Translations under genes and position numbers: made by a program
IMG/VR virus record: IMGVR_UViG_3300017528_000567
Span: 186,001-250,000 of that record
Strand: one strand, 5' to 3'
Length of the DNA: 64,000 nt
Shown here: one piece after another, positions 21,088 to 37,134 of the stretch
How the letters are laid out: each line of letters begins with the position of its first letter
Position numbering within the stretch: position 1 is the stretch's first letter
The notes under the pieces: model-generated
The model's database searches: none
The model's input: the letters and a program-made list of their open reading frames with translations, nothing else
What the model was told of the DNA's origin: nothing

Positions 21088-21094
21088 AAAGACT

Positions 21095-21181
21095 AGCGGA
21101 AAATCGAGGTCCCGACCCCCACAGACTTTCGCCTGCCCACCGCTTTCAAGGCGGGTCCCGCACCTTGCGAGTTGATCTTCC
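21095..21181 (-). tRNA. tRNA-Ser(TGA), 8/4 fold
   Basis: GGAAGATC/GATTTTCC, loop CTTGAAA. Confidence 0.85.
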
Positions 21182-21182
21182 G

Positions 21183-21272
21183 TGGCGGAAGCCGGAGGTC
21201 TCGATCCCCAGACCCCTTTCGGGGTCCGCACCGTTTTCGAAACGGGCTCGGCCCTTGGCCGATTCAGCTTCC
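21183..21272 (-). tRNA. tRNA-Ser(CGA), 8/4 fold
   Basis: GGAAGCTG/CGGCTTCC, loop TTCGAAA, CCA. Confidence 0.88.
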
Positions 21273-21276
21273 ATGT

Positions 21277-21564
21277 CTAATTCTTGCCGCCCTCTCGGAG
21301 CGACTTCATCTTCTCGAGCTCGAGCAGCGCCGCCGCAGAGACCTCCGGATTCGAAGACTCAGCCTGCAGCATCAGCAGCACGGCACACAGCGGCCACAGC
21401 TTGCGGACCTCCGCCCGTACAGCTCGGGCCTCTGCCGGCGAAGCGCTCGCCATGTACTGCTCAAACCAGTGGCTCATCTCGGGGAGCTTATGGCGGTCCG
21501 CTTCAGTGGCGTGCGCCATGAGGTGCCCGAGCTCTCTAATCTTGTCTGCGACTGCTTGGTTCAC
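21277..21564 (-). CDS. Hypothetical helical protein
   Basis: GGTGTA-N9-GTG. Confidence 0.65.
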   Translation of the reverse strand: MNQAVADKIRELGHLMAHATEADRHKLPEMSHWFEQYMASASPAEARAVRAEVRKLWPLCAVLLMLQAESSNPEVSAAALLELEKMKSLREGGKN

Positions 21565-21580
21565 AAGAGTCGCTACACCA

Positions 21581-21655
21581 TGGCGCCCACGGAGAGACTC
21601 GAACTCTCAGCATCTGCGTTCGAAGCGCAGCGCTCGTCCATTGAGCTTCGCGGGC
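21581..21655 (-). tRNA. tRNA-Arg(TCG)
   Basis: Loop CTTCGAA, CCA. Confidence 0.9.
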
Positions 21656-21656
21656 G

Positions 21657-21731
21657 TGGCGTCCTCGACAGGACTCGAACCTGTGTAGCGACCTTCGGAG
21701 AGTCGTGCCTGATCCACTAGGCTACGAGGAC
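21657..21731 (-). tRNA. tRNA-Arg(CCG)
   Basis: Loop CTCCGAA, CCA. Confidence 0.9.
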
Positions 21732-21734
21732 ATA

Positions 21735-21923
21735 TCACCAAGAATCGTAGTCTGTGACGTTCTTCTCCTTGTGGCAGTAACAGCATCGCACGTGGACCCC
21801 GAGCCCGATGCCGGTGATGGTGAATGTCACCTCCATCGTCCCCTGGCATTTTTTTGAGTGGCGCTTCTCGAACCCAATGAGCGCCTTGTGCTCCTTCTCA
21901 TTCGGCTTGAACACGCTCAACAT
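21735..21923 (-). CDS. Small Cys-rich phage protein
   Basis: TITGIG...CCYC...TDYDSW; AGGAG RBS. Confidence 0.65.
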   Translation of the reverse strand: MLSVFKPNEKEHKALIGFEKRHSKKCQGTMEVTFTITGIGLGVHVRCCYCHKEKNVTDYDSW

Positions 21924-21936
21924 GGCCAGACTCCTT

Positions 21937-22010
21937 TGGCGCCCCCGGAAGGAATTGAACCTTCACCATCGGCTTAGGAAACCGCCGCTCGTCCATCGAG
22001 CTGCGAGGGC
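21937..22010 (-). tRNA. tRNA-Arg(CCT)
   Basis: Loop TTCCTAA, CCA. Confidence 0.9.
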
Positions 22011-22015
22011 ATTCT

Positions 22016-22091
22016 TGGCGCTCCCGGAAGGAATCGAACCCTCGCGGTCCCGAGGTAGAAACTCGGCGCTCTTCCTCTGAGCTACGGGAGC
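22016..22091 (-). tRNA. tRNA-Arg(TCT)
   Basis: Loop TTTCTAC, CCA. Confidence 0.9.
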
Positions 22092-22106
22092 ATGGTGTCA
22101 GTACAC

Positions 22107-22180
22107 CGGAGGCGCGGGCCGGAATCGAACCGACGTAGGCTGGGTTGCAACCAGCTGCCTAACCATTCGACCACCGCGCC
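22107..22180 (-). tRNA. tRNA-Cys(GCA)
   Basis: Loop TTGCAAC, U73. Confidence 0.9.
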
Positions 22181-22189
22181 GTTATCTAG

Positions 22190-22260
22190 TGCGAGCAGGG
22201 ATAATCGAAATCCCGTCTACTGGTTGGGAACCAGCCATCCTACCACTGAACGATGCTCGC
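22190..22260 (-). tRNA. tRNA-Gly(CCC)
   Basis: Loop TTCCCAA. Confidence 0.88.
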
Positions 22261-22261
22261 G

Positions 22262-22335
22262 CGGTGCGGGTAGAGGGGGTCGAACCCACTCGAACTGGTT
22301 GGAAGCCAGCCATGCAGCCGTTACATCTTACCCGC
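22262..22335 (-). tRNA. tRNA-Gly(TCC)
   Basis: Loop CTTCCAA. Confidence 0.88.
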
Positions 22336-22341
22336 AGAATC

Positions 22342-23076
22342 TTAGTGCCCGCCGTGCGCGCCGGTCTCGTACTTGGGCTTGCCGTCCCATTTATGAGCAT
22401 ACGCGAAACTCGTGATCTTGATCGAGTTCCCAGGCGACACGCGCTTCTTCATCTCGGGGCCAATATAGTCCCCCGGGGTCGGCATCATGTAGTCGTTGCC
22501 GGCGCTATCAGTCCGCCTAGTTGTTGCGCCGATCTCGCGGATAATAACTGACTGCGGCCCTGTGACCTCGACGACCTCGTACCAATCGACGTTCGTCTGG
22601 TCGTAGCCCCAACTCGTATACAGGATGTCACCCATGAAAAGGTCGGTCGAGAACTTCCGCTTCTCTGCTTGCTCCTCCTCCTTGACCTTCATCCGAGCCT
22701 TGCGGCTGTCTATAAGCTTCTGGATGGCTTCATCGCGCTCATGCGCTCGAGTCCCGAACGAATGGTGCCAGATGGGCTTGCTCTGCTTACCCACGAAGGC
22801 GATTGCATAATAGATGACCCTGCCGGTCTTATCGGTCCCATCGTACGTCCAGGCCGAGACATCGGTGCCTTGCGGATCAACTGGTTCCGTGTCGCGGGCT
22901 TGAGGCGGCAAGTACCGTGTGGGAGCGATCCGAGCCTCATGTTGCCCCGCGACCCGTTCGCTGAGGTCCTGACAAGCACTGGCCAGCTGTAGACGTGAGG
23001 GGCGCTGGCTCTGCGCATAACTCAGCAGGCGGCGGAGCTCGCGTTGCAACTCACTGGTGTTGGCGATCTTCTGCAT
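22342..23076 (-). CDS. Hypothetical phage protein (WGYDQTNVDWYEV motif)
   Basis: 244 aa with AAGGA RBS. Confidence 0.75.
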   Translation of the reverse strand: MQKIANTSELQRELRRLLSYAQSQRPSRLQLASACQDLSERVAGQHEARIAPTRYLPPQARDTEPVDPQGTDVSAWTYDGTDKTGRVIYYAIAFVGKQSKPIWHHSFGTRAHERDEAIQKLIDSRKARMKVKEEEQAEKRKFSTDLFMGDILYTSWGYDQTNVDWYEVVEVTGPQSVIIREIGATTRRTDSAGNDYMMPTPGDYIGPEMKKRVSPGNSIKITSFAYAHKWDGKPKYETGAHGGH

Positions 23077-23157
23077 CGGTCAAATCCTTTGGGCTCGGAC
23101 CGCACGTCACGCCGTGCCTTGCCTCGCAGAAAATGGCGAAAGATAAGAGCTTTACCG

Positions 23158-23247
23158 CAGCGGAGAGAGACGTACTCGAAACGCGCCCCCCTTGCGGGGT
23201 GCCCTCCGCTTTCCAGGCGGTGACAGGCCCTGCCTGCTTCACTCTCC
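23158..23247 (-). tRNA. tRNA-Ser(GGA), 8/4 fold
   Basis: GGAGAGTG-AA-GCAGGC D stem, loop CTGGAAA, GCGT/ACGT T stem. Confidence 0.85.
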
Positions 23248-23248
23248 T

Positions 23249-23326
23249 CGGTAGGCCGTGCTGGAATTGAACCAGCCTGATGCCCGCATATAAGGCGGGT
23301 GAATTCGACCAGATTTCTAACGGCCC
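23249..23326 (-). tRNA. tRNA-Ile(TAT)
   Basis: CCCGC-CTTATAT-GCGGG anticodon arm. Confidence 0.82.
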
Positions 23327-23334
23327 ACAAGCCT

Positions 23335-23409
23335 AGAGCCTACGACTGGAGTCGAACCAGCAAACTCTAACATACCAAGTTAGCGCTCCGCCTCCGGAGC
23401 AACGTAGGC
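23335..23409 (-). tRNA. tRNA-Thr(GGT)
   Basis: Loop TTGGTAT. Confidence 0.85.
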
Positions 23410-24153
23410 AAATTCTGGTACCCGCGGACGGTCTCGCACCGACACTACACCGGGCTTAAGCCGGTTGCCTCTGCTTTGGGCTACGCGGGCATGATAACGA
23501 ACAAATGTGCGCACTCTGTGACAGTTGGAACAGACCAGATCGCACTTCGCAATCTCAGTCTGGATGGCCTCAAGGGACAAGCGACTCGCCATCCTAGAGA
23601 CGTTAAACCTCTTCGCCTCGCCCTCTCGATGATCGAAGTCCATGGCACACGGATGAAATTTTCCCCCACAATCCATGCAGGGTTTCGTGGCTTTGTGCTC
23701 CTGCAGCCACTCCCTATTACGAGCCGCGACCCTAGGGGCGCTACACCGCGCCCGCTGAGCGTACGCTGCCTTGTTGGACTTATAATGCCCGGCTGCGTAG
23801 GTTTTATGACACTGCTTGCATTGCGACTGCCGTACCCCTGACGCCTTTCGCTTGAACCCGAACTGATCTTGGTGCTTGTAAGCGTCACACTTCGCGCAAT
23901 AGAGCAGGGCCTGCCCAGAGGAATCATACGTCCGTTTCCGAGGCACGCCTCCTTTGTGCGCCGCCCCGTAATTAGTGGCCAGCCTTCTGAAGTGAGCAGT
24001 GCTGATCCCCAAAGATTGGATCTTCTGCTTCAGGTGGCTTTGGGTGCCACCTCCTTGCTTTAGCCCCAACGCGCGAAGCACTCCCGCCATTGAAACGTTG
24101 CCGGAGACCGCTCTTTCAAGGGACTGTCTTGAGTGGTGATCCGTCATGACCAC
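23380..24153 (-). CDS. HNH (homing-type) endonuclease; 3' end overlaps tRNAs
   Basis: CAKC, CKQC, CMDCG, MDFDH, EIAKCDLVCSNCHRVRT. Confidence 0.85.
   Translation of the reverse strand: MVMTDHHSRQSLERAVSGNVSMAGVLRALGLKQGGGTQSHLKQKIQSLGISTAHFRRLATNYGAAHKGGVPRKRTYDSSGQALLYCAKCDAYKHQDQFGFKRKASGVRQSQCKQCHKTYAAGHYKSNKAAYAQRARCSAPRVAARNREWLQEHKATKPCMDCGGKFHPCAMDFDHREGEAKRFNVSRMASRLSLEAIQTEIAKCDLVCSNCHRVRTFVRYHARVAQSRGNRLKPGVVSVRDRPRVPEFAYVAPEAER
23417..23490 (-). tRNA. tRNA-Leu(TAA), short variable arm
   Basis: ACCGG-CTTAAGC-CCGGT, CCA. Confidence 0.82.
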
Positions 24154-24197
24154 GACCCAGATGGCGCATAAGTGCCTTTGCGCCTAGTCTGCCCTTC

Positions 24198-24283
24198 AGT
24201 GCGAGCGACAGGAGTCGAACCTGCAGGTGCCACTAGGGTAGTCGGGTTTGAGCCGACCGCGTTTGCCGTTACGCCACGCTCGC
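24198..24283 (-). tRNA. tRNA-Leu(CAA)
   Basis: Loop CTCAAAC, long variable arm. Confidence 0.88.
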
Positions 24284-24457
24284 AACACATACTTGAAGAT
24301 GCCCCATCGCTAGTACGCTTAGGCACCCTCCAAAATTCAAACCACAAGCCGAGTGTCAATGCCGCGCACCCCTCCCGCCGCACAGCTCAGCACAGGTCGG
24401 CGCCTCGTTCTGGAAGGCGAGGCAGGACCACAGCACCGAGTTGAAAGCTGCGTGCTA

Positions 24458-24497
24458 TCTTGAGGGAGCCGCCTCCTGCCAATTGGGCTACGTCCGC
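24458..24497 (-). pseudogene. 5' half of a short-arm tRNA-Leu(CAA)
   Basis: GCGGACGTAGCCCAATTGGCAGGAGGCGGCTCCCTCAAGA with no 3' half found. Confidence 0.6.
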
Positions 24498-24670
24498 ATT
24501 TTGAGCAGGTTGGTCGCGACATTACTAACCGCGGCCCGCCATGCTTCCTGAATCCTAGGCGTGAGCTCCTCCCACTTCGGCATGGGCAGCCCCGCATAGT
24601 TTTTGAAACCAGTGACCTCCCCATAGGCGTTGTATGCGCTCATAGCGAAGGCCTCAACATCGTATAGCAT
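24488..24670 (-). CDS. Small phage protein (MPKWEELTPRIQEAW)
   Basis: GGTGTA-N9-ATG. Confidence 0.65.
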   Translation of the reverse strand: MLYDVEAFAMSAYNAYGEVTGFKNYAGLPMPKWEELTPRIQEAWRAAVSNVATNLLKMRT

Positions 24671-24685
24671 CCCGATCCCTACACC

Positions 24686-24760
24686 AGGGTGACCGACGGG
24701 AATCGAACCCGCTAACACGTGATCCACAATCACGCCGCGATCCTAGTTGCGTTCGGCCAC
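24686..24760 (-). tRNA. tRNA-His(GTG)
   Basis: Loop TTGTGGA. Confidence 0.88.
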
Positions 24761-24835
24761 AGTGCGGATAGGAGGAGTCGAACCTCCACTGGACGGCTTC
24801 TCGAACCGTTGCCTCTGCCGTTGGGCTACATCCGC
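24761..24835 (-). tRNA. tRNA-Leu(GAG), short variable arm
   Basis: Loop TCGAGAA; D arm GCCCAACGGCAGAGGC. Confidence 0.82.
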
Positions 24836-24841
24836 ATCATC

Positions 24842-24927
24842 AGTGCATGAGAGAGGACTCGAACCTCCACGGTCTTGCGACCAGTCGGACCTGAGCCGAC
24901 CGCGTTTGCCTATTACGCCACCCATGC
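24842..24927 (-). tRNA. tRNA-Leu(CAG)
   Basis: Loop CTCAGGT, long variable arm. Confidence 0.88.
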
Positions 24928-24929
24928 AT

Positions 24930-25004
24930 TGGTACGGGGTGAGGGATTCGAACCCCCGGCCAGTTGCTTGTAGGGCAACCACTCTACCGCTGAGTTAACC
25001 CCGC
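24930..25004 (-). tRNA. tRNA-Val(TAC)
   Basis: Loop CCTACAA, CCA. Confidence 0.9.
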
Positions 25005-26081: not shown

Positions 26082-28040
26082 TCAGACGGGTGGGGACCCT
26101 ACGTCACTCGTACGATCACTGGACGCGAATTGGCGCCTGATCACCCTCACGAAGTCTTCCAAGTTCACGGGCTTCGTCAGGTAGTCCAAGAATCCTGCAC
26201 GCAAACCGCGCTGCTTGTCCTGCTCCGAGGCTGCCGCCGACACCGCGATCACCGGCACGTGTTGCGTCTTCGGGTCATTGCGAAGTTCGCGTAGCGCATC
26301 AAACCCTGACATTCCCGGCAGGTTGATGTCCATGACGATCACATCCAACCTGTGAGCCCGTGCCAGCTGCAAACCGAGCTCGCCGGTGGTCGCGCTCATC
26401 AACGAGACGTCCTCGAGAAGACTGGCGACGATATCTTGCATGAACGCGAGGTTGTCTGGACTGTCTTCTACGTACAAAACGGTCCGACGCACTTGCTGCT
26501 GCTTGGTGCGCACAGCCGGTAGGTCCACCCAGAACTCCGAGCCCTCACCGAGCACACTGCGGAACCCCACATCGCCGTGCATAAGCTGAGCAAGGCGCTT
26601 CGTGATGAACAGACCGACGCCCGTACCTTCGATTGGCCCGAGCTCCTGTCCAGCGCGTTGAAATGCCTGGAAGAGCTTGCCTTGCTTGTCGAGCGGGATT
26701 CCGATGCCCGTATCCGACACCGTCAACCGAACGTGGTTCGCATCCACAACCGAGAGGTGCAGCCCAACTTTGCCCCCAGGCCGATTGTACTTGATCGCGT
26801 TCGTAGCGAAGTTCATCAAGATCTGCGTAAACCGCAGACGATCGGCGGCTATCAGCGGCAGCTCCGCGGCTGGCGGCTCCAACGTAATTTCAACCTCTGA
26901 GCGCACCGCGAGCGGCTCAAGGGTGGGCAGCACTTGCACAAGGACCTCATACGCATTCGTCGGCTCGATGGAGACGGTCACACCGCCCGAATCGATCTGC
27001 GACAAGTTCAGGATGTCCTCGATCAAGCACCGCAAGTGCTCGCCGCTGGTCAAGATCCGAGCGACTCGTTCCCGCTGTAGGCCGGACAGCGGCTGCTTCT
27101 GGTCGAGCTGCATCAGTTGTGCGAACCCCAGGATGACACTCAGCGGCGTGCGTAGCTCGTGGCTAATCAACGAGAAAAACTCGCTCCTTGCCCTGCTAGC
27201 CACGTCAGCACGCAGCTCCTCCGCACGCTTGCTATCGCTCAGATTCAAAACAAAGCGCAGCCCCTTATCCGGGTTGTTGTCAAAAGTGGTTCCGCCGACC
27301 AAAATCGGAATACGTCGGCCATCCTTGTTTAGGAGTTCTTTCTCGTAGGGATGAACCACTTTCGTAGCCCGACTCTGCTCCAGCGCACGTGCGTCTAGCT
27401 CCCACCACTCCGGTGGCGTGACTTGATCCCACCGCACTTGTTGGGTGGCCAGTTCGGCCGCGGAGTAACCGATCATATCCAAGAACGCCGTATTGGCGTC
27501 CAGTATCCACCCCTCATAGTCAGTCGTGACAATGCCGATAATCCCGGAGCTGACGAGGCCTTGGAGGAGCAATTCGCCCTTGCGGAGCGCAGCGTCTATG
27601 CGTATGTGCGCCTCTCGGAGCTGCTCGGCACGCTTGCGATCGCTCAGATCGAGTACGAAGCAGATGCCCTCACTTCCGTCGCTCACGGAACCGCCAAGCA
27701 AGATGGGGATTCGGCGACCGCCCTTATGGATGAGTTCGCTCTCATACGGAGGCCCCTCTTTCGCCCCCTCCGCCTCTTGCGACAACAACCCCAAAGGGGT
27801 GAGTTGGTCCCAGCGGACTTGTCCAGACAACAATTCTTCTTGCGAGTAACCAGTCATCTCCAAGAAGGCCGCATTCGCGTCCAGGAGGATCCCACGGCCG
27901 TCAACCGTAACGAGGCCAAGACCTCCAGAGTCGAAAAATCTCTGAAGCCGCGCCTCACTCTTGCTGAGTGCCGCTCCTACGCGTTTGCATTCAACGAGCT
28001 CGGAACGCAGTTCGTCTTCAACGGGGTAGTCAGCGCCCAT
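26082..28040 (-). CDS. Hybrid sensor histidine kinase (2 PAS, HisKA, HATPase, REC)
   Basis: SHELRTPL, NFATNAIKY, DTGIG, GTGVGL, VEDS...MDINLP...TKP. Confidence 0.95.
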   Translation of the reverse strand: MGADYPVEDELRSELVECKRVGAALSKSEARLQRFFDSGGLGLVTVDGRGILLDANAAFLEMTGYSQEELLSGQVRWDQLTPLGLLSQEAEGAKEGPPYESELIHKGGRRIPILLGGSVSDGSEGICFVLDLSDRKRAEQLREAHIRIDAALRKGELLLQGLVSSGIIGIVTTDYEGWILDANTAFLDMIGYSAAELATQQVRWDQVTPPEWWELDARALEQSRATKVVHPYEKELLNKDGRRIPILVGGTTFDNNPDKGLRFVLNLSDSKRAEELRADVASRARSEFFSLISHELRTPLSVILGFAQLMQLDQKQPLSGLQRERVARILTSGEHLRCLIEDILNLSQIDSGGVTVSIEPTNAYEVLVQVLPTLEPLAVRSEVEITLEPPAAELPLIAADRLRFTQILMNFATNAIKYNRPGGKVGLHLSVVDANHVRLTVSDTGIGIPLDKQGKLFQAFQRAGQELGPIEGTGVGLFITKRLAQLMHGDVGFRSVLGEGSEFWVDLPAVRTKQQQVRRTVLYVEDSPDNLAFMQDIVASLLEDVSLMSATTGELGLQLARAHRLDVIVMDINLPGMSGFDALRELRNDPKTQHVPVIAVSAAASEQDKQRGLRAGFLDYLTKPVNLEDFVRVIRRQFASSDRTSDVGSPPV

Positions 28041-28198
28041 ACGCGATGTTTTAGCCGCCCTCCCATGGCCACGTCCAGTACGTGAGGCAATTGGCGCACG
28101 ACTGCCTCAGTTGGGCATCGGATCGAATGGCTCTAGCGCCGTTGCGATTGTATCGAGCCTCGATACAGATGAGCAGCTAAGCCGTCTGCGATCTCAAC

Positions 28199-31100
28199 TC
28201 ATTCGGTCACGGGACGCGAAGCGAATTGGCGCCTGATCACACTCACGAACTCCTCAACAATCAATGGCTTCGTGAGGTACGCCACAAAGCCAGCCCGCAC
28301 TCCTCGCTGTTTATCGCGCTCCGATACAGCTGCCGAAATCGCAATCACCGGCACATGTTGCGTCTTTGGGTCATTACGAAGTTCGTAGAGCGCCTCAAGC
28401 CCCGACATTCCCGGCAGGTTGATATCCATGAGTATCACATCCAACCTGTGAGCCCGAGCGATCTCGAGGCCAAGCTCACCGGTCGTCGCAGTCAGCAACG
28501 CAACATCTTCAAAAAAGTTGCTTACCAAGTCCTGCATGAGCACGAGATTGGCAGGGTTATCCTCCACATAAAGGATGCGCCGTGCGTTCACCGACGCAAC
28601 TTTTGACTGCAGTGGGCGGTCCTGTAAGCGACTTCGGTCGTCAGGAGACGCGATCGGGATGTCAACCCAAAACTCCGAGCCCTCACCGAGCACACTGCGA
28701 AAGCCCACCTCGCCGTGCATGAGTTGCACCAACCGTTTTGCAACGAACAGACCGACGCCCGTGCCTTCGATCACTCCCGCTTCCTGTCCAGCGCGTTGGA
28801 AGGCTTGGAAGAGTTTGTCTTGCTTATCTTTCGGAATACCGCAGCCCGTATCCGATACGGCGAGTCGCACGTGGTTCGCATCCACAACCGAGAGGTGCAG
28901 CCCGACTTTGCCCCCAGGCCGATTGTACTTGATCGCGTTCGTAGCGAAGTTCATCACGATTTGATTAAGGCGTGTGCGGTCGGCAGCCACCAACGGCAAC
29001 TTCTCGGGAGCGGGTTCCAGAGTGATCGTGATGTCGGACTGAGCTGCCAACGGCTCAAGCGTAGGCATCAGCTCTTCCATGGCATCGTACGCGCTCGTCG
29101 GTTCGATAGACATCGACATGCCCCCCGATTCGATCCGCGACAAGTCCAAAATGTCCTCGATCAAGCGCAGCAAGTGCTCGCCGCCTTTGAGCACGTGTTG
29201 AGCTCGCTCGCGTTGGCGTTCAGGCAGCGGCGTCTTCCTGTCTTGCAACAAGAGCTGGGTGAACCCCAGGATGGAATTGAGCGGCGTACGCAGCTCGTGG
29301 CTCACTAGCGAGAGAAACTCGCTCTTGGCTCTGCTTGAAGCTTCGGCGATGGCGTGCGCCTCACGCAGTTCCTCGGCTCGCTTGCGATCACTCAGGTCCA
29401 ATACAAAGCAGATACCCTCGTCGCCGGTGCCATCGCGCAGAGCGCCACCCATCAAGACCGGGATCCGGTGGCCGTCCTTGTGGACGAATTCTTGCTCGTA
29501 CACGGGAATCACTCCCGTGCGCCGACACTGCTCCGCCACAAGAGCGCCTTGCTCCCAATACTCCGGAGGCGTGAAGTCACGCCAGCTGAGTTGTCCGGAG
29601 GCCAGTTCCTCGCGCGAGTATCCGATCATCTCCGCGAACGAAGCATTGGCATCCAAGATCGTCCCTTCATAGTTGCCCGTGACAACGCCGAAAATCCCAG
29701 ACTCAACCAGTCTTTGGAAGCGGGACTCACTATGGCGCAGCGCGGTTTCTACACGTAGGCGTTCGGCTGTTTCAGCTTCAGCAACTGCATGCGCCCCGCG
29801 CAACTGCTCTGCCCGCTTGCGATCGGTCAGATCCAGCACAAAGCAGATGCCCTCGCTCCCAGCGTCGTCAGTCAGGGCAGAGCCGATCAGGACGGAGATT
29901 CGGCGGCCGTCTTTATGGATAAATTCTTTCTCGTACGCCGGATGCGATCTCGTACTGGAGGCCCGAGACAGCTTAATCACACTCGCATCTAGCTCCCGAT
30001 ACTCTCTGGGTGTGAGGTCGTCCCAGCGCATTTGTCCGGAGGCCAAATCGTCTCGCGAGAAACCGAGCAGATTCAGAAACGCATCATTGGCATCCAGGAT
30101 GTCTCCTTGCGTGCCCGCCGTGAAAATGCCGATGATCCCGCTGGCACCGAGCCTTTCGAAACGCGCCTCACTCTGGTGGAGCGCAGCTTCGATGCGCTTA
30201 AACCCAGTTAGGTCCAGCACGAAGCATGTGCCCTGTGCAGCGTCCTCGATCTGAGCCCCACCGATCAAAACGGGTACTCGGTGGCCGTCTTTGTGTAGAT
30301 ATTCCTTCTCGTACACGGGAATCACACCCGTGCTCTGACATCGCTCCACCATCAGCGCATCTTGCGCCCGCAACTCCTGTGGCGTGATTTGATCCCAGCG
30401 TATCTGGCCAGAGGTGTAATCCTCTCGCGAGTAACCAAGCATATCCAGGAACGCCCCATTAACATCCAGGATGTTCCCCTTGAGGTCGCCCGTAATGATC
30501 CCGATGATCCCGGACTCGGCGAGTCTTTGAAAACGCCGTTCACTCTTGCGTAGCTCGAGCTCGGCGCGCTTACGTTCGGCCTCCACACGCTTGCGGTCGC
30601 TCAGGTCCAAGACGAAACAAACACCCTCATCGGGGTCGTCGTCGATCTGGGCACCGCCAATCAAGACAGGGACTCGGCTGCCGTCCTTGTGGAAGTACTC
30701 TTTCTCGTACACGGGAGCCACTCTCGTGTCCCGACAGGCCGCCGTCACACGCGCATCCTGCTCCCAGAACTCCGGAGGCGTGAGTCGATCCCAACGGAGC
30801 GATCCAGAGGCCACATCCTCTCGCGAATAGCCGAGCATCTCCAAGAATGCGGCGTTGGCTTCCACGATTGTGCCGTCATATCCGGCGGTGATAATCCCGA
30901 TGACTCCGGCCTCAGCCAGTCTGTGGAAGCGCGACTCGCTCCTACGGAGCGCAGTTTCGGTCCGCTTGTGCTCCCTCAGGTCGAGAACACAGCTGATAGC
31001 CTCGCGCCCCTGCCCAGGCTCATCAAGCACCGCAGAACCAATCAGAACTGGGACTCGGCTGCCGTCCTTGTGGAAGTACTCTTTCTCGTACCCGTGAAGT

Positions 31101-31960
31101 ACTCCCGTGCGCTCTAATTGTTCGCGCGCACGATCGTCTCTCTCCCAATACTCCGGAGGCGTGAGCCGCCTCCCGCCAAGTCGGCAGAATTCCTCCCGCG
31201 AGTAACCCAGCATCGTCACGAACGCCTCATTGACATCCACGATGTTCCGATCCAGGTCGGCCGACACGATGCCAAGAATCCCCGCATCGGCCAGTCGCTT
31301 GAAGCGTCTTTTACTCTTGACGAGCTCCGCTTCTACGCGCTGACGTTCAGCGATTTCTGCCTCAGCAATCGCTTGCGCCTTCTTGACCTCCTCAGCGCGC
31401 TTCTGACCACTCAGGTCCAGGACAATGCAGATGGCTTCGTCCGCGGTACTGTCGAGATGGGCACCACCGATCAATACTGGGATTCGCCGGCCGTCTTTAT
31501 GTACGAGTTCTTTCTCGTACGGGAGGACCACGCCTGTGCCCCGGCCGTCCGCCTTCACCCTCATGTCCCGGTCCAATAACTCCGGAGGAGTCAGCCGGTC
31601 CCAACGGATTTTCCGCGAGATCAGTTCGTCTCGCGAGTAACCAACCATACCCAGAAAAGCGGCATTCGCCTCTAGGATGGTCATTTGAGAGTTGGTCGTG
31701 AAAATGCCGATGAGCCCGGTATCGGCGAGGCGCTGGAACCGCAACTCGCTCTTACGGAGCGCTGCTTCTACGCGCTCGCGTTCGGCGATTTCGGCCTGCA
31801 GAGCGGCCTCCAGTCGTTTACACTCGAGGGTCTGTGCCGTCAATCGTGACAGCTCTAGTTGAGGGTCGCAGGCCCCTGGTTCAGTACCCATGTGTCTCTT
31901 TACATGCTCATGACTGCGCTCGTCCAGTGCATGTTTCGATCGGCTTATCAAAAACCACAA
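28199..31960 (-). CDS. Hybrid sensor histidine kinase (6 PAS, HisKA, HATPase, REC)
   Basis: Six TPxE..YEKE..HKDG-type repeats plus the same kinase/receiver motifs; start uncertain. Confidence 0.95.
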   Translation of the reverse strand: MWFLISRSKHALDERSHEHVKRHMGTEPGACDPQLELSRLTAQTLECKRLEAALQAEIAERERVEAALRKSELRFQRLADTGLIGIFTTNSQMTILEANAAFLGMVGYSRDELISRKIRWDRLTPPELLDRDMRVKADGRGTGVVLPYEKELVHKDGRRIPVLIGGAHLDSTADEAICIVLDLSGQKRAEEVKKAQAIAEAEIAERQRVEAELVKSKRRFKRLADAGILGIVSADLDRNIVDVNEAFVTMLGYSREEFCRLGGRRLTPPEYWERDDRAREQLERTGVLHGYEKEYFHKDGSRVPVLIGSAVLDEPGQGREAISCVLDLREHKRTETALRRSESRFHRLAEAGVIGIITAGYDGTIVEANAAFLEMLGYSREDVASGSLRWDRLTPPEFWEQDARVTAACRDTRVAPVYEKEYFHKDGSRVPVLIGGAQIDDDPDEGVCFVLDLSDRKRVEAERKRAELELRKSERRFQRLAESGIIGIITGDLKGNILDVNGAFLDMLGYSREDYTSGQIRWDQITPQELRAQDALMVERCQSTGVIPVYEKEYLHKDGHRVPVLIGGAQIEDAAQGTCFVLDLTGFKRIEAALHQSEARFERLGASGIIGIFTAGTQGDILDANDAFLNLLGFSRDDLASGQMRWDDLTPREYRELDASVIKLSRASSTRSHPAYEKEFIHKDGRRISVLIGSALTDDAGSEGICFVLDLTDRKRAEQLRGAHAVAEAETAERLRVETALRHSESRFQRLVESGIFGVVTGNYEGTILDANASFAEMIGYSREELASGQLSWRDFTPPEYWEQGALVAEQCRRTGVIPVYEQEFVHKDGHRIPVLMGGALRDGTGDEGICFVLDLSDRKRAEELREAHAIAEASSRAKSEFLSLVSHELRTPLNSILGFTQLLLQDRKTPLPERQRERAQHVLKGGEHLLRLIEDILDLSRIESGGMSMSIEPTSAYDAMEELMPTLEPLAAQSDITITLEPAPEKLPLVAADRTRLNQIVMNFATNAIKYNRPGGKVGLHLSVVDANHVRLAVSDTGCGIPKDKQDKLFQAFQRAGQEAGVIEGTGVGLFVAKRLVQLMHGEVGFRSVLGEGSEFWVDIPIASPDDRSRLQDRPLQSKVASVNARRILYVEDNPANLVLMQDLVSNFFEDVALLTATTGELGLEIARAHRLDVILMDINLPGMSGLEALYELRNDPKTQHVPVIAISAAVSERDKQRGVRAGFVAYLTKPLIVEEFVSVIRRQFASRPVTE

Positions 31961-33295: not shown

Positions 33296-33370
33296 CAGAG
33301 CCCAGTGCGGGGCACGATCCCGCATCACCGGGGTACAAATCCGGTGCACTGCCTATTGTGCTAACTGGGC
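33296..33370 (-). tRNA. tRNA-Thr(TGT)
   Basis: GCCCAGT/ACTGGGC acceptor, loop TTTGTAC. Confidence 0.8.
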
Positions 33371-33378
33371 AAACTTCT

Positions 33379-33780
33379 TCACTCCCCAGAGTCACAGACT
33401 CGGCACCACAAGCCGCATACCCGTCCCATCACTCTATTGTAGAGAGCGTGCTTTGCCGGGTCCAACTCGTTGTCTGTGATGGCTGACTCCAGAAGTGTTG
33501 TCAGCTGCTTCCTGACCCGGTCTAGGCTTGTGTGCTCGGTATCGACAAACACGCCTTGAGGCGTCTGCACGATCGTGAACTCCCCCCATCCGACTCCGCT
33601 CTCAGAGTGCTGCAACACTACGGCAAGCCGTTCGGGCTCGACCTGCCCCCTATATTGCCCGGCCTTGGGGACACCCTCTTTGTAATACGCATGTTGCAGC
33701 CGCGCTCGTGTTGGCAAACCATCCAAGAGTTCTCGAAAGCTTGTCCTCATATCGGCAATCCCTATTTCGTGGTCGTTCAC
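33379..33780 (-). CDS. Hypothetical protein, paralog A (start approximate)
   Basis: Similar to 33777..34145. Confidence 0.65.
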   Translation of the reverse strand: MNDHEIGIADMRTSFRELLDGLPTRARLQHAYYKEGVPKAGQYRGQVEPERLAVVLQHSESGVGWGEFTIVQTPQGVFVDTEHTSLDRVRKQLTTLLESAITDNELDPAKHALYNRVMGRVCGLWCRVCDSGE

Positions 33781-34145
33781 TCTTCCGGGAAACAGACGCG
33801 ACACCGCGGGCCGCATCCGCGCTTCATGACTTCATTGTAGAGAGCGTGCTTCTCGGGGTCTTGATCATTGTCCGTGATGGCTGAGTCTACTAGCGCCGCC
33901 AGGTATTTCTTGACCCGCTCTGAGCTCATACACTCCGTGTTGAGAAACACGCCTTGAGCGGTTTGCTTGATCGTGATCTCGCCGAAACCGAAGCCACTCT
34001 CGCTGAACTGGAGCCCGACCACAACCATCTCCGGCGGAGTGTCCCACTCTCGCCCCCCGTCCTTGGGTACGCCCGCCTTGCTATCGGCGTAGCACAACGA
34101 CACATGGGTTGGCAGACCCTTCAGAACCTCTATAAAATCAGGCAT
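33777..34145 (-). CDS. Hypothetical protein, paralog B
   Basis: SESGFGFGE...SAITDN..DPEKHALYN..CGPRCRVC. Confidence 0.7.
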   Translation of the reverse strand: MPDFIEVLKGLPTHVSLCYADSKAGVPKDGGREWDTPPEMVVVGLQFSESGFGFGEITIKQTAQGVFLNTECMSSERVKKYLAALVDSAITDNDQDPEKHALYNEVMKRGCGPRCRVCFPEE

Positions 34146-34220
34146 GGTCGCTCCGTCGGGTAACGATCCCGCAGCCTTGCCACCTTATGAGAGTGGGGCA
34201 CCCACCATGGGCGCGGAGCG
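34145..34220 (-). tRNA. tRNA-Met/Ile2(CAT), reduced D arm
   Basis: CGCTCCG/CGGAGCG acceptor, loop CTCATAA, CCA. Confidence 0.75.
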
Positions 34221-34221
34221 A

Positions 34222-34297
34222 TGGTAGCGACGAGAGGATTTGAACCTCCACTAAACACGGCCTAAACGTGTCGCCTCTGCCGTTGGGCTACGTCGCC
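34222..34297 (-). tRNA. tRNA-Leu(TAG), short variable arm
   Basis: Loop TTTAGGC, CCA. Confidence 0.82.
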
Positions 34298-34317
34298 AAA
34301 CAATCACAATCACTTCT

Positions 34318-34453
34318 TAGAGGCCGCCCGTGGAGTCGAACCACTGACTTGTAAGAGCGATGCGGTGTCCCCTCGCGGGAACGAGTTCATCACTCTGGGA
34401 GCTTGCGCTCCAGCTCCGTAGGCTGGCGGGGAACCGATCCCCTGTAGGCGGCC
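34318..34453 (-). ncRNA. Expanded tRNA-like RNA
   Basis: GGCCGCCT/GGGCGGCC acceptor, GTGG-TTCGACT-CCAC T arm, multi-hairpin middle domain. Confidence 0.7.
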
Positions 34454-34462
34454 AAGACTTCG

Positions 34463-34601
34463 TTCTCGCTCGAGTGCCGGACCTGGTTAGCTTGTATGCC
34501 TGGTTAATAGCCGGGTGCGAGTACCATCTCGCGTTCATAGGGCTTGCGCCTTATGTCAGGATTCGAACCTGTGCGTGTAAGGTCATGCTAGTGAACGAGA
34601 A
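34463..34601 (-). ncRNA. YrlA-like (circularly permuted tRNA-mimic) RNA
   Basis: Paired termini TTCTCGTTC/GAGCGAGAA; order T arm, GCAA-capped acceptor-like stem, D-like arm. Confidence 0.7.
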
Positions 34602-34602
34602 C

Positions 34603-34715
34603 TGGTGGGGCCTGAAAGAGTCGAACTTTCAAGGTCTTGTGGGCACTCGAGAGGGATCCTTGCAGACCCGAGGTACTAGTGCCGTGTCAGTAGGCGGCCA
34701 CCCGCCAAAAGCCCC
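34603..34715 (-). ncRNA. Expanded tRNA-like RNA with CCA end
   Basis: GGGGCTT/AGGCCCC-ACCA, GAAAG-TTCGACT-CTTTC, long bulged stem instead of an anticodon arm. Confidence 0.7.
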
Positions 34716-34931
34716 ATGTGACCGTCTTTCCGGCCTGTCACTCAACTCGCTCGATGCCACTCTAGATAGAGGGTGACACAAGCTAACTCCTTGCGTGCTT
34801 GCTACACAGCCGGTGCCGAACAGGACAACCGACAGCGCAATCAATGCGTTCATCTCTATAACTCCGTCGCGCCACAGTGCCATCCCTTCATACACCGAAA
34901 GATCACAAAACCGCGCGACGCACCAAAAAAG

Positions 34932-36098
34932 TCACTTCATCTGAGCAGCCGCGGCTTGCAGAACCGCACGCGTGTCATCTGAAATTCCCGTCAGTTTCTG
35001 CACCATCCACTCAAGAATGACTTTGCCCTTCTGCATGCGCGTGAGGACCTTGGAGCCACCTTGATAGAAGTACTCGCCAAAAACCGCGTTCAGCAGGCGT
35101 TTGCCGCCAAGTCTCACGGAGATCAGCGCCACAGTATCGTGCTCACCCAACACAACAGGCTTGCCATTGAGAACGAGCGTGACCTGATACCCATCCTTGT
35201 TATACGCGCCAGCCTTGGGGTCATTGTAATGACCGGGCTCCGGCCCAAAAGTCGCCACATGCAGCTTGAGCTCGACAACCTGCTTGCGGCCCGCCACTGC
35301 TGGCGCGTCACCGGCAACTTGGCCGGACTCTACTAGCCAGTGCTTGAGAGAGATCTCTGGGCTGGCCGGCAGTTTCTCGGAGAGGCTCCAGCCTCTCGCA
35401 TCCCGCACCTTGGAGTTGAAGCGCCCGTTGTACTCGAAGTCGCCGGTCGGTAGCCCGAACGCCGTCGAGATCTGGCGATGCAGCCACGCCGGGTTACTCT
35501 GCTCGTCCTTCTTGATCGGCAGCTTGTGTGTCTGCATATCCCAGACATCACGCCGCCCACCGCCGCCAACGTAGTAGTCACTTCTTGAGACATGGACAGC
35601 AACCACAAACACATGCTGGTCAGCCGTTCGCCCATAGTACGCATACGCGTGTCGCGAGAACGATGACTCGTCACCCGAGTAGCCCCCCTTATCCCGCTGT
35701 GTCGCGGTCGTGAACTGCCACTCCACCCCACCCGGGATACCAGCGCCAGCTCGGGCCTGCTCCCAAGTGACCACCACATCCTTCGGCGGCGTCCACTGCT
35801 GCCGTGGTGGCGCATCATCAGCCCACGAAGGTTCTGTCTGCGGGACTGGCTGTGATGACCCCGGATCCTCACGGTACAGAGGCTGAGGCTTTTTCGGAAA
35901 GAGCAGATCGTACGCCCGATTGACCTCTTGCATCGCGAAGGTAGAACCGCCGCTATCGGGGTGCACATCGCGTAGCTTCGACCGAACCGCTTTCTTAGCG
36001 TCTGCCTCGGTCGGTGCGTCGTGAGGCCCGAAACCAAGCAAAGCCAGAGCTTCCTGCCTGGTCATCGTGATTCGAGCTTCGCGAAAATCGTACGTCAT
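34932..36098 (-). CDS. Protein with N-terminal DnaJ-like J domain
   Basis: ALALLGF...RDVHPDSGGS...EVNRAYDLL; starts MTYDFR. Confidence 0.75.
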   Translation of the reverse strand: MTYDFREARITMTRQEALALLGFGPHDAPTEADAKKAVRSKLRDVHPDSGGSTFAMQEVNRAYDLLFPKKPQPLYREDPGSSQPVPQTEPSWADDAPPRQQWTPPKDVVVTWEQARAGAGIPGGVEWQFTTATQRDKGGYSGDESSFSRHAYAYYGRTADQHVFVVAVHVSRSDYYVGGGGRRDVWDMQTHKLPIKKDEQSNPAWLHRQISTAFGLPTGDFEYNGRFNSKVRDARGWSLSEKLPASPEISLKHWLVESGQVAGDAPAVAGRKQVVELKLHVATFGPEPGHYNDPKAGAYNKDGYQVTLVLNGKPVVLGEHDTVALISVRLGGKRLLNAVFGEYFYQGGSKVLTRMQKGKVILEWMVQKLTGISDDTRAVLQAAAAQMK

Positions 36099-36283
36099 AC
36101 GTTGGAGCCTCAGAAGCGCAGTAGGCGGCCAAAGAAGGGGTGGCGCGCCCGACTCCCCAGGTTGAGCTCTAGCGCTACACCGGAGCGCGCAGAGCTCGAC
36201 CTGTTCAGGTCGATCCAACAATAGAAAAGCGGTGGAGGGCCGCAGCCTGTTGCGTAATTTGGAAGCGCCGCAGCGACGCAGGA

Positions 36284-36790
36284 CTAGGTCAAGTCAACGC
36301 GTCGATTGAAAGGCTGCGATCGCCAAGCCCCAAAGAGCCCAAACTCTCGCGCCTGGCGGACGGCTGGGACGAGATGCAACCAAGCTTCGTAGGGCATGGA
36401 TCCCCGCATATAGTTACATCTCAAGCAGGCGGGCAGGACGTTGGCTCGAGTATGCGCCAGCGAGTTGTCGATACGGTCAAGAGTGATCCGCATCTCGGTC
36501 TCACCACAATAGCAGCACCCCTGCCTAATCAACGCGGCCACAAAATCGCGATTCAGATCGTTACCCGGCCTACCGCGCTTCTTGTCAGAACTTCTAGAAT
36601 CCGTAACCAGAACCACAACAGGATGGTTAGCTCTGTACCGAGCATCTTTTTTGCTTCGCGCCTCCGGATGGAGAGCCCTTTTGCGCTGCGTACGGCAATT
36701 GCTACACGTCCTCCGTCGGTACCCAGAGGACGAAAGGTCAAAGCCGGACAACGGCTTCTCAACCTGACAAACTCTACAGACCCTTGTCAT
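36284..36790 (-). CDS. HNH endonuclease
   Basis: CRVC, CSNC, CCYCG, LDRIDNSLAHTRANVLPACLRCN. Confidence 0.85.
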   Translation of the reverse strand: MTRVCRVCQVEKPLSGFDLSSSGYRRRTCSNCRTQRKRALHPEARSKKDARYRANHPVVVLVTDSRSSDKKRGRPGNDLNRDFVAALIRQGCCYCGETEMRITLDRIDNSLAHTRANVLPACLRCNYMRGSMPYEAWLHLVPAVRQAREFGLFGAWRSQPFNRRVDLT

Positions 36791-36793
36791 CGT

Positions 36794-36930
36794 TAGTGGG
36801 GGATGAAGGAGTCGAACCTTCTATGCTTGAAAGCACCCGAAAGGGTTCCCGACGACTGCCGAAAACGAGTGTGCGGTGCTGGTCGATGCTTTCGATTTAC
36901 CGTCGAAGTGGGGCCAACCCCCAACCCCCC
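36794..36930 (-). ncRNA. Expanded tRNA-like RNA
   Basis: GGGGGGT/ATCCCCC acceptor, GAAGG-TTCGACT-CCTTC, GAAAGCA/TGCTTTC stem. Confidence 0.68.
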
Positions 36931-36947
36931 AATGGACCGAGTCCCTG

Positions 36948-37117: not shown

Positions 37118-37134
37118 GAAACTACTGCCACTAC

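What the first reader, a model, noticed from the sequence alone, without database searches (positions are those of the whole stretch)
26082..31960. Two cytoplasmic multi-PAS hybrid histidine kinases inside a phage tRNA array
Seen: tandem paralogs (2 and 6 PAS repeats) with intact H, N and G boxes and receiver Asp, near-identical DNA over part of the kinase core, no evident membrane segment and no separate response regulator or HPt in the window. Such kinases are unusual cargo for phages. Inference: interference with host phosphorelays (development, motility).
Basis: partly seen in the sequence, partly recalled or inferred. Interest (0 to 1): 0.6.

Follow-up and report, generated by a model that had tools for sequence, protein, structure and literature searches.

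The report
Jumbo phage carries two sensor kinases
A soil jumbo phage carries, inside its tRNA gene island, two intact and selectively maintained sensor kinases derived from myxobacteria, whose cellular relatives usually sit next to a second kinase and often a sigma-54 activator, so the phage probably uses them to rewire host signalling.

Summary
Window 26082-28040(-) and 28199-31891(-) encode two soluble PAS-HisKA-HATPase-REC hybrid kinases with 2 and 6 PAS units. All catalytic motifs are intact. The 255-kb record has no other receiver, no Hpt and no sigma-54 activator.

The contig is a real jumbo phage: terminase, portal, protease, baseplate and a replication module are present. The locus is not a chimera. 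Two independent assemblies are collinear at over 99% identity, soil-metagenome contigs bridge the gene junction, and a sister phage (~80% nt identity) has one orthologous kinase at the same place in its tRNA island.

The three phage kinases form one clade nested among Polyangia (Myxococcota) kinases. They match the phage's GC content and evolve under purifying selection (dN/dS 0.18-0.37).

New findings:
- In 16 of 24 cellular loci the relative lies beside a REC-histidine kinase. In 10 of 24 an NtrC-type sigma-54 activator is also nearby. The phage took only the top sensor.
- All phage PAS units are copies of one type, the first PAS of the cellular proteins.

Best reading (inferred, not shown): the kinases feed into or drain a host two-component partner. 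This is a canonical protein family in an unusual carrier. Precedents are phiCDHM1 AgrC and the EsV-1 hybrid kinases.

The parts
26082..28040 (-). HK-A (P0001, 652 aa): PAS-PAS-HisKA-HATPase_c-REC soluble hybrid histidine kinase
   Evidence: ORF; Pfam domains; motifs and no membrane segment; AF2 model with mean pLDDT 76.6, CA and REC blocks mostly above 90; Foldseek hits to WalK, NifL, ShkA and LOV-HK
27243..27953 (-). HK-A sensor: two PAS units (about aa 30-131 and 157-266) joined by helical linkers
   Evidence: Pfam PAS_9/PAS; secondary structure of the model; PAS unit alignment
26514..27191 (-). HK-A kinase core (HisKA + HATPase_c, aa 284-509; phospho-His 294)
26139..26480 (-). HK-A receiver domain (aa 521-634; phospho-acceptor Asp 571)
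28199..31891 (-). HK-B (P0002 from residue 24; 1230 aa; the open frame runs up to a TTG at 31960): 6 PAS-HisKA-HATPase_c-REC soluble hybrid histidine kinase
29363..31744 (-). HK-B sensor: six tandem PAS units of one type
   Evidence: Pfam gives 6 PAS_9 stretches; DNA repeat families D1-D4 with 375-441 nt spacing; unit alignment at 39-62% identity
28652..29329 (-). HK-B kinase core (HisKA + HATPase_c)
28235..28576 (-). HK-B receiver domain
26731..26818 (.). Near-identical tract in the HK-A ATP-binding domain: 88 nt with one mismatch to 28869-28956, including 52 identical bases. Likely gene-conversion tract, and the point where short-read contigs break
28869..28956 (.). Partner copy of the near-identical tract, in HK-B
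28041..28198 (-). 158-nt spacer between HK-B and HK-A. No consensus promoter or convincing terminator found
   Evidence: bridged by independent contigs
14265..25004 (-). tRNA island, part downstream of the kinases (20 tRNA genes)
33298..44988 (-). tRNA island, part upstream of the kinases (18 tRNA genes called by ARAGORN, plus two further Rfam tRNA matches)

Best explanation
The two genes are functional, host-derived cytoplasmic sensor kinases kept by a lineage of soil jumbo phages.

Shown:
- They are genuine phage genes.
- They are complete HisKA-type hybrid kinases.
- They descend from one capture of a Polyangia-type (Myxococcota) kinase, which later duplicated in this phage.
- Their sensors are arrays of a single amplified PAS type.
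- They evolve under purifying selection.
- The cellular relatives lie beside a REC-histidine kinase and often an NtrC-type (GAFTGA) sigma-54 activator. The phage has neither.

Inferred:
- During infection the PAS arrays read a cytoplasmic cue. The cue is unknown; PAS domains typically sense redox state, energy state or a small ligand.
- The dimeric kinase autophosphorylates on the H-box His.
- The phosphoryl group goes to its own receiver and/or to the receiver of the host's cognate REC-kinase. That switches the host's NtrC-type sigma-54 regulon on or off to the phage's benefit.
- The phage therefore replaces the top sensor of a host cascade with its own.
For: Viral contig. PHROG hits across the record: TerL, portal, prohead protease, baseplate wedge, DNA polymerase, clamp loader, UvsX, helicases, ligase, GroEL and RtcB. 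Nearly all ORFs from 17.6 kb to the end run in one direction. GC is uniform at 0.55-0.61.

Not a chimera.
- An IMG/VR contig from another sample is collinear at 99.4-99.6% over window 16085-37798.
- An ENA contig is 99.86% identical over 19731-28291.
- Logan contigs from two soil/rhizosphere runs of different studies bridge the HK-A/HK-B spacer, and 6 runs from 6 studies hold at least a fifth of the stretch's sampled words.

Conserved in a sister phage. It is about 80% identical in DNA and has 34 tRNAs in the 23-kb locus. One 1095-aa ortholog sits at the same site.

Origin. In the tree of kinase core plus REC, HK-A and HK-B are sisters (support 94). The sister-phage kinase joins them (95). That clade is nested in a 9-row clade (97) with cellular proteins.

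Selection. dN/dS is 0.18-0.37 in all comparisons.

Composition. Gene GC is 0.585-0.59, equal to the phage background. The cellular loci are at 0.59-0.72.

Donor lineage. 18 of 301 sampled genomes of the class that holds a Polyangiaceae MAG have hits at E <= 1e-100. A phylum-wide sample gave 3 of 301. Named hits are Polyangiales or Polyangiaceae.

Cellular context. 16 of 24 loci have an orthologous REC-HisKA-HATPase gene, mostly within about 1-2 kb of the matched kinase core. Ten of 24 have an NtrC-type activator nearby. In two example loci these partners carry an H box with G1/G2 boxes (REC-kinase) and a GAFTGA motif (activator).

Partner interface. The DHp helix that carries the specificity positions stays close to the cellular consensus.

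No alternative route in the phage. The record has no Hpt, no other REC and no activator.
Against: - No biochemical or expression data exist. No RNA run holds the stretch.
- The host is unknown. No relative of the phage terminase was found in 401 sampled Polyangia genomes.
- 8 of the 24 cellular loci lack a full-length REC-kinase match, so the module link is frequent but not universal.
- Both paralogs changed 5 positions each in the first DHp helix relative to the cellular consensus. That may mean altered partner choice.
- The phage kinases lack the DHp-proximal PAS_7/PF24820 sensor found in most cellular relatives.
- The complex prediction of the HK-A core with a cellular REC-kinase receiver gave no verdict.
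- The record may be incomplete (CheckV 54%), so a phage-encoded acceptor could lie outside it.
Confidence: 0.5

Rival explanations
1. Phage-internal sensing. The kinases read the state of the infected cell and control the phage's own programme, such as timing of late genes or lysis. They would act through a phage-encoded acceptor that is too divergent to recognise or lies in the part of the genome not in this record.
For: CheckV rates the record 54% complete. The nearest terminase is in a 485-kb uncultured phage, so much of the genome may be missing. Most neighbouring ORFs match no family. Both paralogs diverged in the DHp specificity helix.
Against: No REC, Hpt or sigma-54 activator is present in 255 kb. 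The 86.6-kb near-identical contig has only the two kinase receivers. Sigma-54 promoter-like sites are fewer than in shuffled sequence. The DHp region is still close to the cellular consensus.
Confidence: 0.2
2. Negative action. The proteins work mainly as phosphate sinks or phosphatases, with the receiver draining a host relay. Alternatively, the multi-copy PAS arrays act as a sponge for a small cytoplasmic ligand, so that a host response such as stress, dormancy or defence is silenced rather than driven.
For: The hybrid architecture has a C-terminal receiver and no Hpt. One PAS type is amplified to 2, about 5 and 6 copies in the phage lineage. HisKA kinases are commonly bifunctional (established knowledge).
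Against: The ATP-binding boxes are fully conserved, and the core shows the strongest constraint (dN/dS about 0.18-0.19 against 0.30-0.37 in the PAS part). That is not expected if only the receiver or the PAS units mattered.
Confidence: 0.2
3. Not a phage function. The kinases would be host DNA at a provirus edge, an assembly chimera, or a recent neutral passenger.
For: IMG/VR classes the record as 'provirus'. The genes have close cellular relatives. Short-read contigs break at the shared 52-nt tract, and one contig joins the two genes.
Against: - The genes lie 212 kb from one end and 37.5 kb from the other, with phage genes on both sides.
- No integrase was found.
- GC equals the phage background.
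- Independent assemblies are collinear.
- An ortholog sits at the same site in a phage about 20% diverged in DNA.
- The genes are under purifying selection.
Confidence: 0.04

Closest known systems
Cellular PAS hybrid kinases of Polyangia (Myxococcota), e.g. P0015/P0019 (metagenome contig L101) and the copies in genomes G079, G179 and G472
   Same: Same HisKA-HATPase-REC core, 56-71% identical. Same first-PAS type. Soluble. The phage proteins nest among them in the tree.
   Different: Most cellular genes lie beside a REC-kinase, and many beside an NtrC-type activator. Most carry a different DHp-proximal sensor (PAS_7/PF24820). The phage genes are orphans with 2-6 copies of a single PAS type and phage-like GC.
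ShkA of Caulobacter crescentus (PDB 6qrj), the best sequence match among solved structures
   Same: Cytoplasmic hybrid kinase with DHp-CA-REC (E 2.5e-50; Foldseek rank 3). From established knowledge, ShkA also heads a relay ending in a sigma-54 activator (TacA).
   Different: ShkA has no PAS array. It is activated by c-di-GMP on a pseudo-receiver and uses an Hpt protein (ShpA). It is a chromosomal gene. These points come from my own knowledge and were not tested here.
AgrC homolog of Clostridioides difficile phage phiCDHM1 (PMC3901668)
   Same: A histidine kinase carried by a phage and thought to act on host signalling.
   Different: AgrC is a membrane receptor kinase without PAS or receiver. 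It is part of an agr cassette in a temperate phage of a Firmicute.
Hybrid histidine kinases of the brown-alga giant virus EsV-1 (PMC12993054, PMC6324907)
   Same: Several virus-encoded hybrid kinases with no cognate regulator in the virus.
   Different: Eukaryotic host and an unrelated virus lineage. No tRNA island context. Their function is also unknown.
Orphan cytoplasmic hybrid kinases of Myxococcus xanthus development (EspA/EspC, RodK)
   Same: Soluble PAS-containing hybrid kinases that work in multi-kinase networks without an Hpt (established knowledge; a lead, not a test).
   Different: No specific orthology was shown here. Those proteins belong to Myxococcia, whereas the closest relatives found here are in the class of a Polyangiaceae MAG.

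Membership tests
HisKA-type sensor histidine kinase | DHp domain with the phospho-accepting His in an H box | tested here: met
   Pfam HisKA E 2e-18 and 9e-21. The SHELRTP motif lies at residue 293 in HK-A and 887 in HK-B.
HisKA-type sensor histidine kinase | GHKL ATP-binding domain with N, G1, F and G2 boxes | tested here: met
   HATPase_c E 6e-25 and 4e-26. All four boxes were found. In the model the CA domain blocks are mostly above pLDDT 90.
HisKA-type sensor histidine kinase | ATP-dependent autophosphorylation | not testable with these tools
   Needs purified protein.
Hybrid histidine kinase (kinase fused to a receiver) | C-terminal receiver with acidic pair, phospho-acceptor Asp, conserved Ser/Thr and Lys | tested here: met
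   Response_reg E 4e-24 and 1e-20. Motif residues found.
His-Asp-His-Asp phosphorelay | An Hpt protein or domain and a terminal response regulator encoded with the kinase | tested here: not met
   The 255-kb record has no Hpt at E <= 1 and no further REC. The record may be incomplete.
PAS sensor domain | PAS fold: five-stranded sheet flanked by helices, recognised by PAS profiles | tested here: met
   PAS_9 E 3e-63 in 6 stretches and 4e-19 in 2 stretches. Strand and helix pattern in the model.
PAS sensor domain | Identified cofactor or ligand | tested here: inconclusive
   Only weak matches to structural-genomics PAS entries 2r78 and 3bwl. By eye, no LOV-type Cys motif.
Polyangia hybrid kinase / REC-kinase / NtrC-type activator module | Kinase core orthologous to the module's hybrid kinase | tested here: met
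   The phage clade is nested in a clade with the operon-linked P0015/P0019. Core identity reaches 71% to P0015 in the tree alignment (68.5% by BLASTP).
Polyangia hybrid kinase / REC-kinase / NtrC-type activator module | Adjacent REC-HisKA-HATPase gene | tested here: not met
   Present in 16 of 24 cellular loci. Absent from the phage.
Polyangia hybrid kinase / REC-kinase / NtrC-type activator module | Adjacent NtrC-type sigma-54 activator with GAFTGA | tested here: not met
   Present in 10 of 24 cellular loci. The phage has only weak AAA+ matches in an ATPase and a clamp loader.
Jumbo tailed phage (Caudoviricetes, genome above 200 kb) | Terminase, portal, prohead protease and tail/baseplate genes on a contig above 200 kb | tested here: met
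   A major capsid protein was not identified among the ORFs scanned.
Host-derived auxiliary gene fixed in a phage lineage | Conserved position in related phages, phage-like composition, purifying selection | tested here: met

The most novel reading that the evidence does not exclude
The phage has taken the top sensor of a myxobacterial multi-kinase cascade (hybrid kinase, then REC-kinase, then NtrC-type sigma-54 activator). It rebuilt the input as a tunable array of one PAS type, with copy number changing between phage lineages, and duplicated the gene. An infected Polyangia cell would then have its sigma-54 programme (stress, dormancy or development) driven by phage-owned sensors. This would be the first case of a phage kinase wired into a host multi-kinase network.
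Probability: 0.3. Interest if true: 0.7.

Novelty: new member of a known kind. Interest (0 to 1): 0.45.

Why it matters
Phages are known to tamper with host regulation mostly through small inhibitors, sigma or anti-sigma factors and quorum-sensing receptors. A full sensor kinase carried by a phage is rarely reported.

Here a pair of such kinases is fixed in a jumbo-phage lineage, and there is a concrete candidate target: the REC-kinase / NtrC-type module that accompanies the cellular relatives. That turns 'what do phage kinases do?' into a defined phosphotransfer experiment.

The PAS arrays also give a natural series (2, about 5 and 6 copies of one unit) for studying how signals pass along tandem PAS domains. 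In addition, the kinase phylogeny offers a host clue (Polyangia) for a phage group with no cultured member.

Tried and rejected
- Megablast of the locus against GenBank phages found no match.
- tblastn of HK-A against the phage collection gave mostly mislabelled bacterial contigs. One exception is a 24%-identical PAS-kinase-receiver in a 735-kb uncultured phage.
- The nearest phage by terminase (LR745208.1, 485 kb, 45%) has no HisKA domain.
- Host inference from GroEL failed. It is about 45% identical to every genome tried.
- The phage terminase was not found in 401 sampled genomes of the Polyangiaceae MAG's class.
- No integrase was found.
- A scan of the phage genome for sigma-54 promoters gave 13 sites against about 35 in shuffles, and the single best site lies inside an ORF. 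The phage's own genes do not look sigma-54 dependent.
- The sigma-70 promoter and terminator scan around the kinases was at chance level.
- Neighbouring ORFs gave no Pfam hit. PHROGs named only an HslV-type peptidase, an endonuclease VII and one family of unknown function. The ORF downstream of HK-A is therefore not a hidden Hpt or regulator.
- The complex prediction of the HK-A DHp-CA dimer with the receiver of a cellular REC-kinase scored 0.15 against a mark of 0.34. That is no verdict, and is evidence neither for nor against binding.
- Sequence search of one PAS unit against solved structures gave only marginal hits and no ligand clue.
- The alignment-based scan of IMG/VR found only six other contigs, at 28-38% identity. 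At least one lies next to a tmRNA gene and so is probably host flank.
- The large representative-protein search was not used, because the word search and family scans left nothing open.
Full report
**What is at the coordinates**

Two adjacent minus-strand ORFs occupy 26082-28040 (HK-A, 652 aa) and 28199-31960 (HK-B). Pfam gives the same architecture for both: PAS units (2 in HK-A, 6 in HK-B), then HisKA, HATPase_c and a C-terminal Response_reg domain, all far above the curated cut-offs.

The H, N, G1, F and G2 boxes are present in both proteins. So are the receiver's acidic pair, phospho-acceptor Asp, conserved Ser and Lys. The most hydrophobic 19-residue window averages 1.3, so neither protein has a membrane segment.

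HK-B's frame is open from a TTG at 31960. The ATG at 31891 aligns with the start of the ortholog in a sister phage, so 1230 aa is the likelier length.

An AlphaFold2 model of HK-A built on 26 homologs has mean pLDDT 76.6, with the ATP-binding and receiver blocks mostly above 90. It shows the expected PAS-PAS-DHp-CA-REC succession. Its best Foldseek matches are full-length PAS or hybrid kinases: WalK, NifL, ShkA and LOV-HK chimeras. By sequence the closest solved structure is the hybrid kinase 6qrj.

**How alike the two genes are**

HK-A aligns over its whole length with the C-terminal half of HK-B at 61% amino-acid identity and about 70% DNA identity.

One short tract stands out. Window 26731-26818 equals 28869-28956 apart from one base, with 52 identical bases in a row. 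Identity is 92% over 100 nt and 84% over 300 nt. It is best read as a gene-conversion tract between tandem paralogs.

**Partners in the phage**

Six-frame HMM searches of the whole 255,478-bp record gave the following:
- only these two receivers
- no Hpt even at E <= 1
- only these two HisKA domains
- no sigma-54 activator, only weak AAA+ matches in an ATPase and a clamp loader
- no tyrosine integrase

The ORF directly downstream of HK-A is an HslV-family peptidase, not a hidden phosphotransfer protein. Absence carries a caveat. CheckV rates the record 54% complete. The nearest terminase, at 45% identity, is in a 485-kb uncultured phage, which is probably the source of that estimate.

**Is the contig viral?**

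Yes. The window is bases 186001-250000 of a single 255-kb contig. PHROG scans across it find:
- virion genes: large terminase, portal, prohead protease, baseplate wedge
- replication and repair genes: DNA polymerase, clamp loader, UvsX-type recombinase, Dda/exonuclease V helicases, NAD-dependent ligase
- others: GroEL, RtcB, a vWA protein shared with Ackermannviridae-like phages

Almost all ORFs from 17.6 kb to the end point the same way, and GC is flat at 0.55-0.61. All 38 tRNA genes called by ARAGORN lie in the window on the minus strand. Twenty are on one side of the kinases and 18 on the other. IMG/VR labels the record 'provirus', but I found no host-like flank and no integrase.

**Is it an assembly chimera?**

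No.
- An IMG/VR contig from a different sample (86.6 kb) is collinear with window 16085-37798 at 99.4-99.6% identity, with both kinases and the same junctions.
- An ENA contig of 8.5 kb is 99.86% identical over 19731-28291.
- Six soil or rhizosphere runs from six studies hold at least a fifth of the stretch's sampled words, and six more hold smaller shares.
- Laid on the locus, contigs from two of four runs bridge the HK-B/HK-A spacer (26789-28898 and 27673-28622). Contigs break at the 52-nt shared tract.
- In one run a single contig joins 26766 to 28905, skipping 2138 nt. With 52 bases fitting both sides, this may be a real deletion variant that fuses the two genes, or a k-mer mis-join. The same run also has contigs lying inside the skipped part.

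**Conservation in a sister phage**

A 195.8-kb contig, with an 80.7-kb copy from another source, is about 80% identical in DNA and syntenic. Its 23-kb locus holds 34 tRNAs. At the same site it carries one 1095-aa kinase. An HK inside the tRNA island is therefore a lineage trait, not an accident of one assembly.

**Origin and evolution**

A maximum-likelihood tree of the kinase core plus receiver (120 rows) gives this picture:
- HK-A and HK-B are sisters (SH-aLRT 94).
- The sister-phage kinase is their neighbour (95).
- All three are nested in a 9-row clade (97) with cellular proteins.

That fits one capture followed by a duplication in this phage.

dN/dS is 0.18-0.37 for every pair and region. 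Flanking phage genes are at 0.04-0.12 (one poorly aligned ORF excepted). Synonymous divergence between the paralogs (0.98) is similar to that between the two phages (0.74-0.97). The kinases are thus constrained but change faster than their neighbours.

Their GC (0.585-0.59) equals the phage background, while the cellular loci lie at 0.59-0.72. This argues against a recent transfer.

**The sensors**

All eight PAS units here, and the three sister-phage units that could be extracted, are of one type, 39-62% identical to each other (one orthologous pair reaches 86%). Each finds its best cellular match in the first PAS (about residues 60-208) of the cellular homologs, at about 49-61% identity.

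Most cellular homologs carry other sensor types next to the DHp domain (PAS_7, PF24820). The phage proteins have none. The phage lineage has therefore rebuilt the input as a homotypic array whose copy number varies: 2, 6, and about 5 in the sister phage.

**Donor and likely host**

Named relatives are Polyangiales or Polyangiaceae MAGs and an 'uncultured delta proteobacterium'.

In species-representative genomes:
- 18 of 301 sampled from the class of a Polyangiaceae MAG have hits at E <= 1e-100 (50-60% identity).
- A phylum-wide sample gave 3 of 301. Two of those three reappear in the class sample.

Hits outside this group are at or below 48%. The host assignment to Polyangia is an inference from this phylogeny only. 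GroEL was uninformative, and the phage terminase was not found in 401 sampled genomes of that class. As a parallel, Myxococcus phage Mx1 has 55.5% GC against 68.8% for its host and carries 22 tRNAs (PMC10720576).

**What the cellular relatives tell us**

The first two metagenomic contigs examined showed the relative followed by a REC-HisKA-HATPase gene and an NtrC-type activator. Across 24 cellular loci (first eight loci):
- 16 have a full-length ortholog of that REC-kinase (50-70% identical between loci), mostly within about 1-2 kb of the matched kinase core. A 17th has it in two pieces.
- 10 have the activator nearby.
- Several other contigs are too short to tell.

In two example loci the REC-kinase has a phospho-acceptor Asp (seen in the printed sequence for one locus and by pattern in the other), an H box and G1/G2 boxes. 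The activator has a Walker A motif and GAFTGA. The phage has the sensor kinase only.

In the first DHp helix, which carries the main partner-specificity positions, the sister-phage kinase keeps the cellular consensus apart from one Q-to-R change. HK-A and HK-B each differ at 5 positions, while the positions 7, 11 and 12 residues after the His are N/S, G and F. That these are the specificity positions is established knowledge from EnvZ and HK853 work, not something tested here.

**Most likely mechanism**

Shown: intact, conserved, selected, soluble hybrid kinases in a phage, derived from the top sensor of a cellular module.

Inferred: after infection the PAS arrays respond to a cytoplasmic cue. 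The kinase autophosphorylates and passes the phosphoryl group to its own receiver and/or to the receiver of the host REC-kinase, or removes it. Either way it sets the activity of the host NtrC-type sigma-54 activator.

The phage itself shows no excess of sigma-54 promoter-like sites (13 against about 35 in shuffles), so the target would be host genes. I put about 0.5 on 'acts on host two-component partners'. Within that, about 0.3 goes to the specific REC-kinase / NtrC route.

Rivals:
- Phage-internal signalling through an unseen acceptor (0.2).
- A sink or sponge role (0.2).
- Passenger gene or artefact (0.04).

The one complex prediction allowed gave no verdict and is not used.

**Comparison with what is known**

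The proteins are ordinary members of the HisKA hybrid kinase family, and every sequence-level defining feature tested was met. What is unusual is the carrier and the arrangement.

A comparative survey of 224 jumbo phages mentions receivers only as a divergent, non-two-component type (PMC7824862). The nearest phage by terminase has no HisKA domain.

Precedents exist:
- the AgrC homolog of phage phiCDHM1 (PMC3901668)
- the hybrid kinases of the brown-alga virus EsV-1 (PMC12993054, PMC6324907)
- a 24%-identical PAS-kinase-receiver in a 735-kb uncultured phage

I therefore rate this a new member of a known kind, of moderate interest. The REC-kinase / NtrC context and the homotypic PAS amplification are the new, testable elements.

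Noticed in passing
window 25474-26019 (-): The ORF 33-63 nt downstream of HK-A (depending on the start codon used) is an HslV-family (proteasome-beta-like) peptidase (phrog_1040, E 5e-21). A Thr follows the likely GTG start. It is conserved next to the kinase in the sister phage (dN/dS 0.06).
   Followed up: partly
window 26766 joined to 28905: In one soil run a contig skips 2138 nt at the 52-nt shared tract. That would fuse HK-B's sensor and DHp to HK-A's C-terminal part. It is either a real deletion variant, resembling the single kinase of the sister phage, or a k-mer mis-join.
   Followed up: partly
window 40900-40963 and 40995-41065 (-): Rfam's tRNA model finds two further tRNA-like genes that ARAGORN did not call. 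ARAGORN calls no tRNA-Met or tRNA-Tyr here, whereas the sister phage has both.
   Followed up: no
window 14265-14354 (-): A 90-nt 'tRNA-Arg(tct)' lies apart from the main array and was not matched by the Rfam tRNA model at gathering score. It may hold an insertion or be mis-typed. The phage also encodes an RtcB ligase (5906-7360).
   Followed up: no
window 32802-32804 versus L100 4983-5239: The 99.5%-identical IMG/VR contig has about 255 extra bases just upstream of the kinase region. This is an indel polymorphism between near-identical phages.
   Followed up: no
window 36284-36790 (-); G000 11590-13200 and 13373-15013 (+): An endonuclease VII/HNH-type gene sits inside the tRNA island. Two large HNH endonuclease paralogs lie near the left end of the record. 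They may be mobile elements shaping the island.
   Followed up: no
window 34932-36221 (-) and G000 1504-2853 (+): Two ORFs far apart share the same ~60-residue N-terminal domain (phrog_13942/phrog_9210, unknown function). Between the two phages the 429-aa copy aligns over only 97 codons, with dN about 1.
   Followed up: no
window 3426-5063, 5906-7360, 10958-13327 (-): GroEL, the tRNA ligase RtcB and a vWA-domain protein lie downstream of the tRNA island. The vWA protein is 33% identical to proteins of Ackermannviridae-like phages and Shewanella Thanatos phages.
   Followed up: partly
L121 7676-8063 (IMG/VR contig 2757320411_000003): Another 'viral' contig with a 38%-identical kinase has a tmRNA gene about 2 kb away. 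That kinase is probably host flank of a provirus rather than phage cargo.
   Followed up: no
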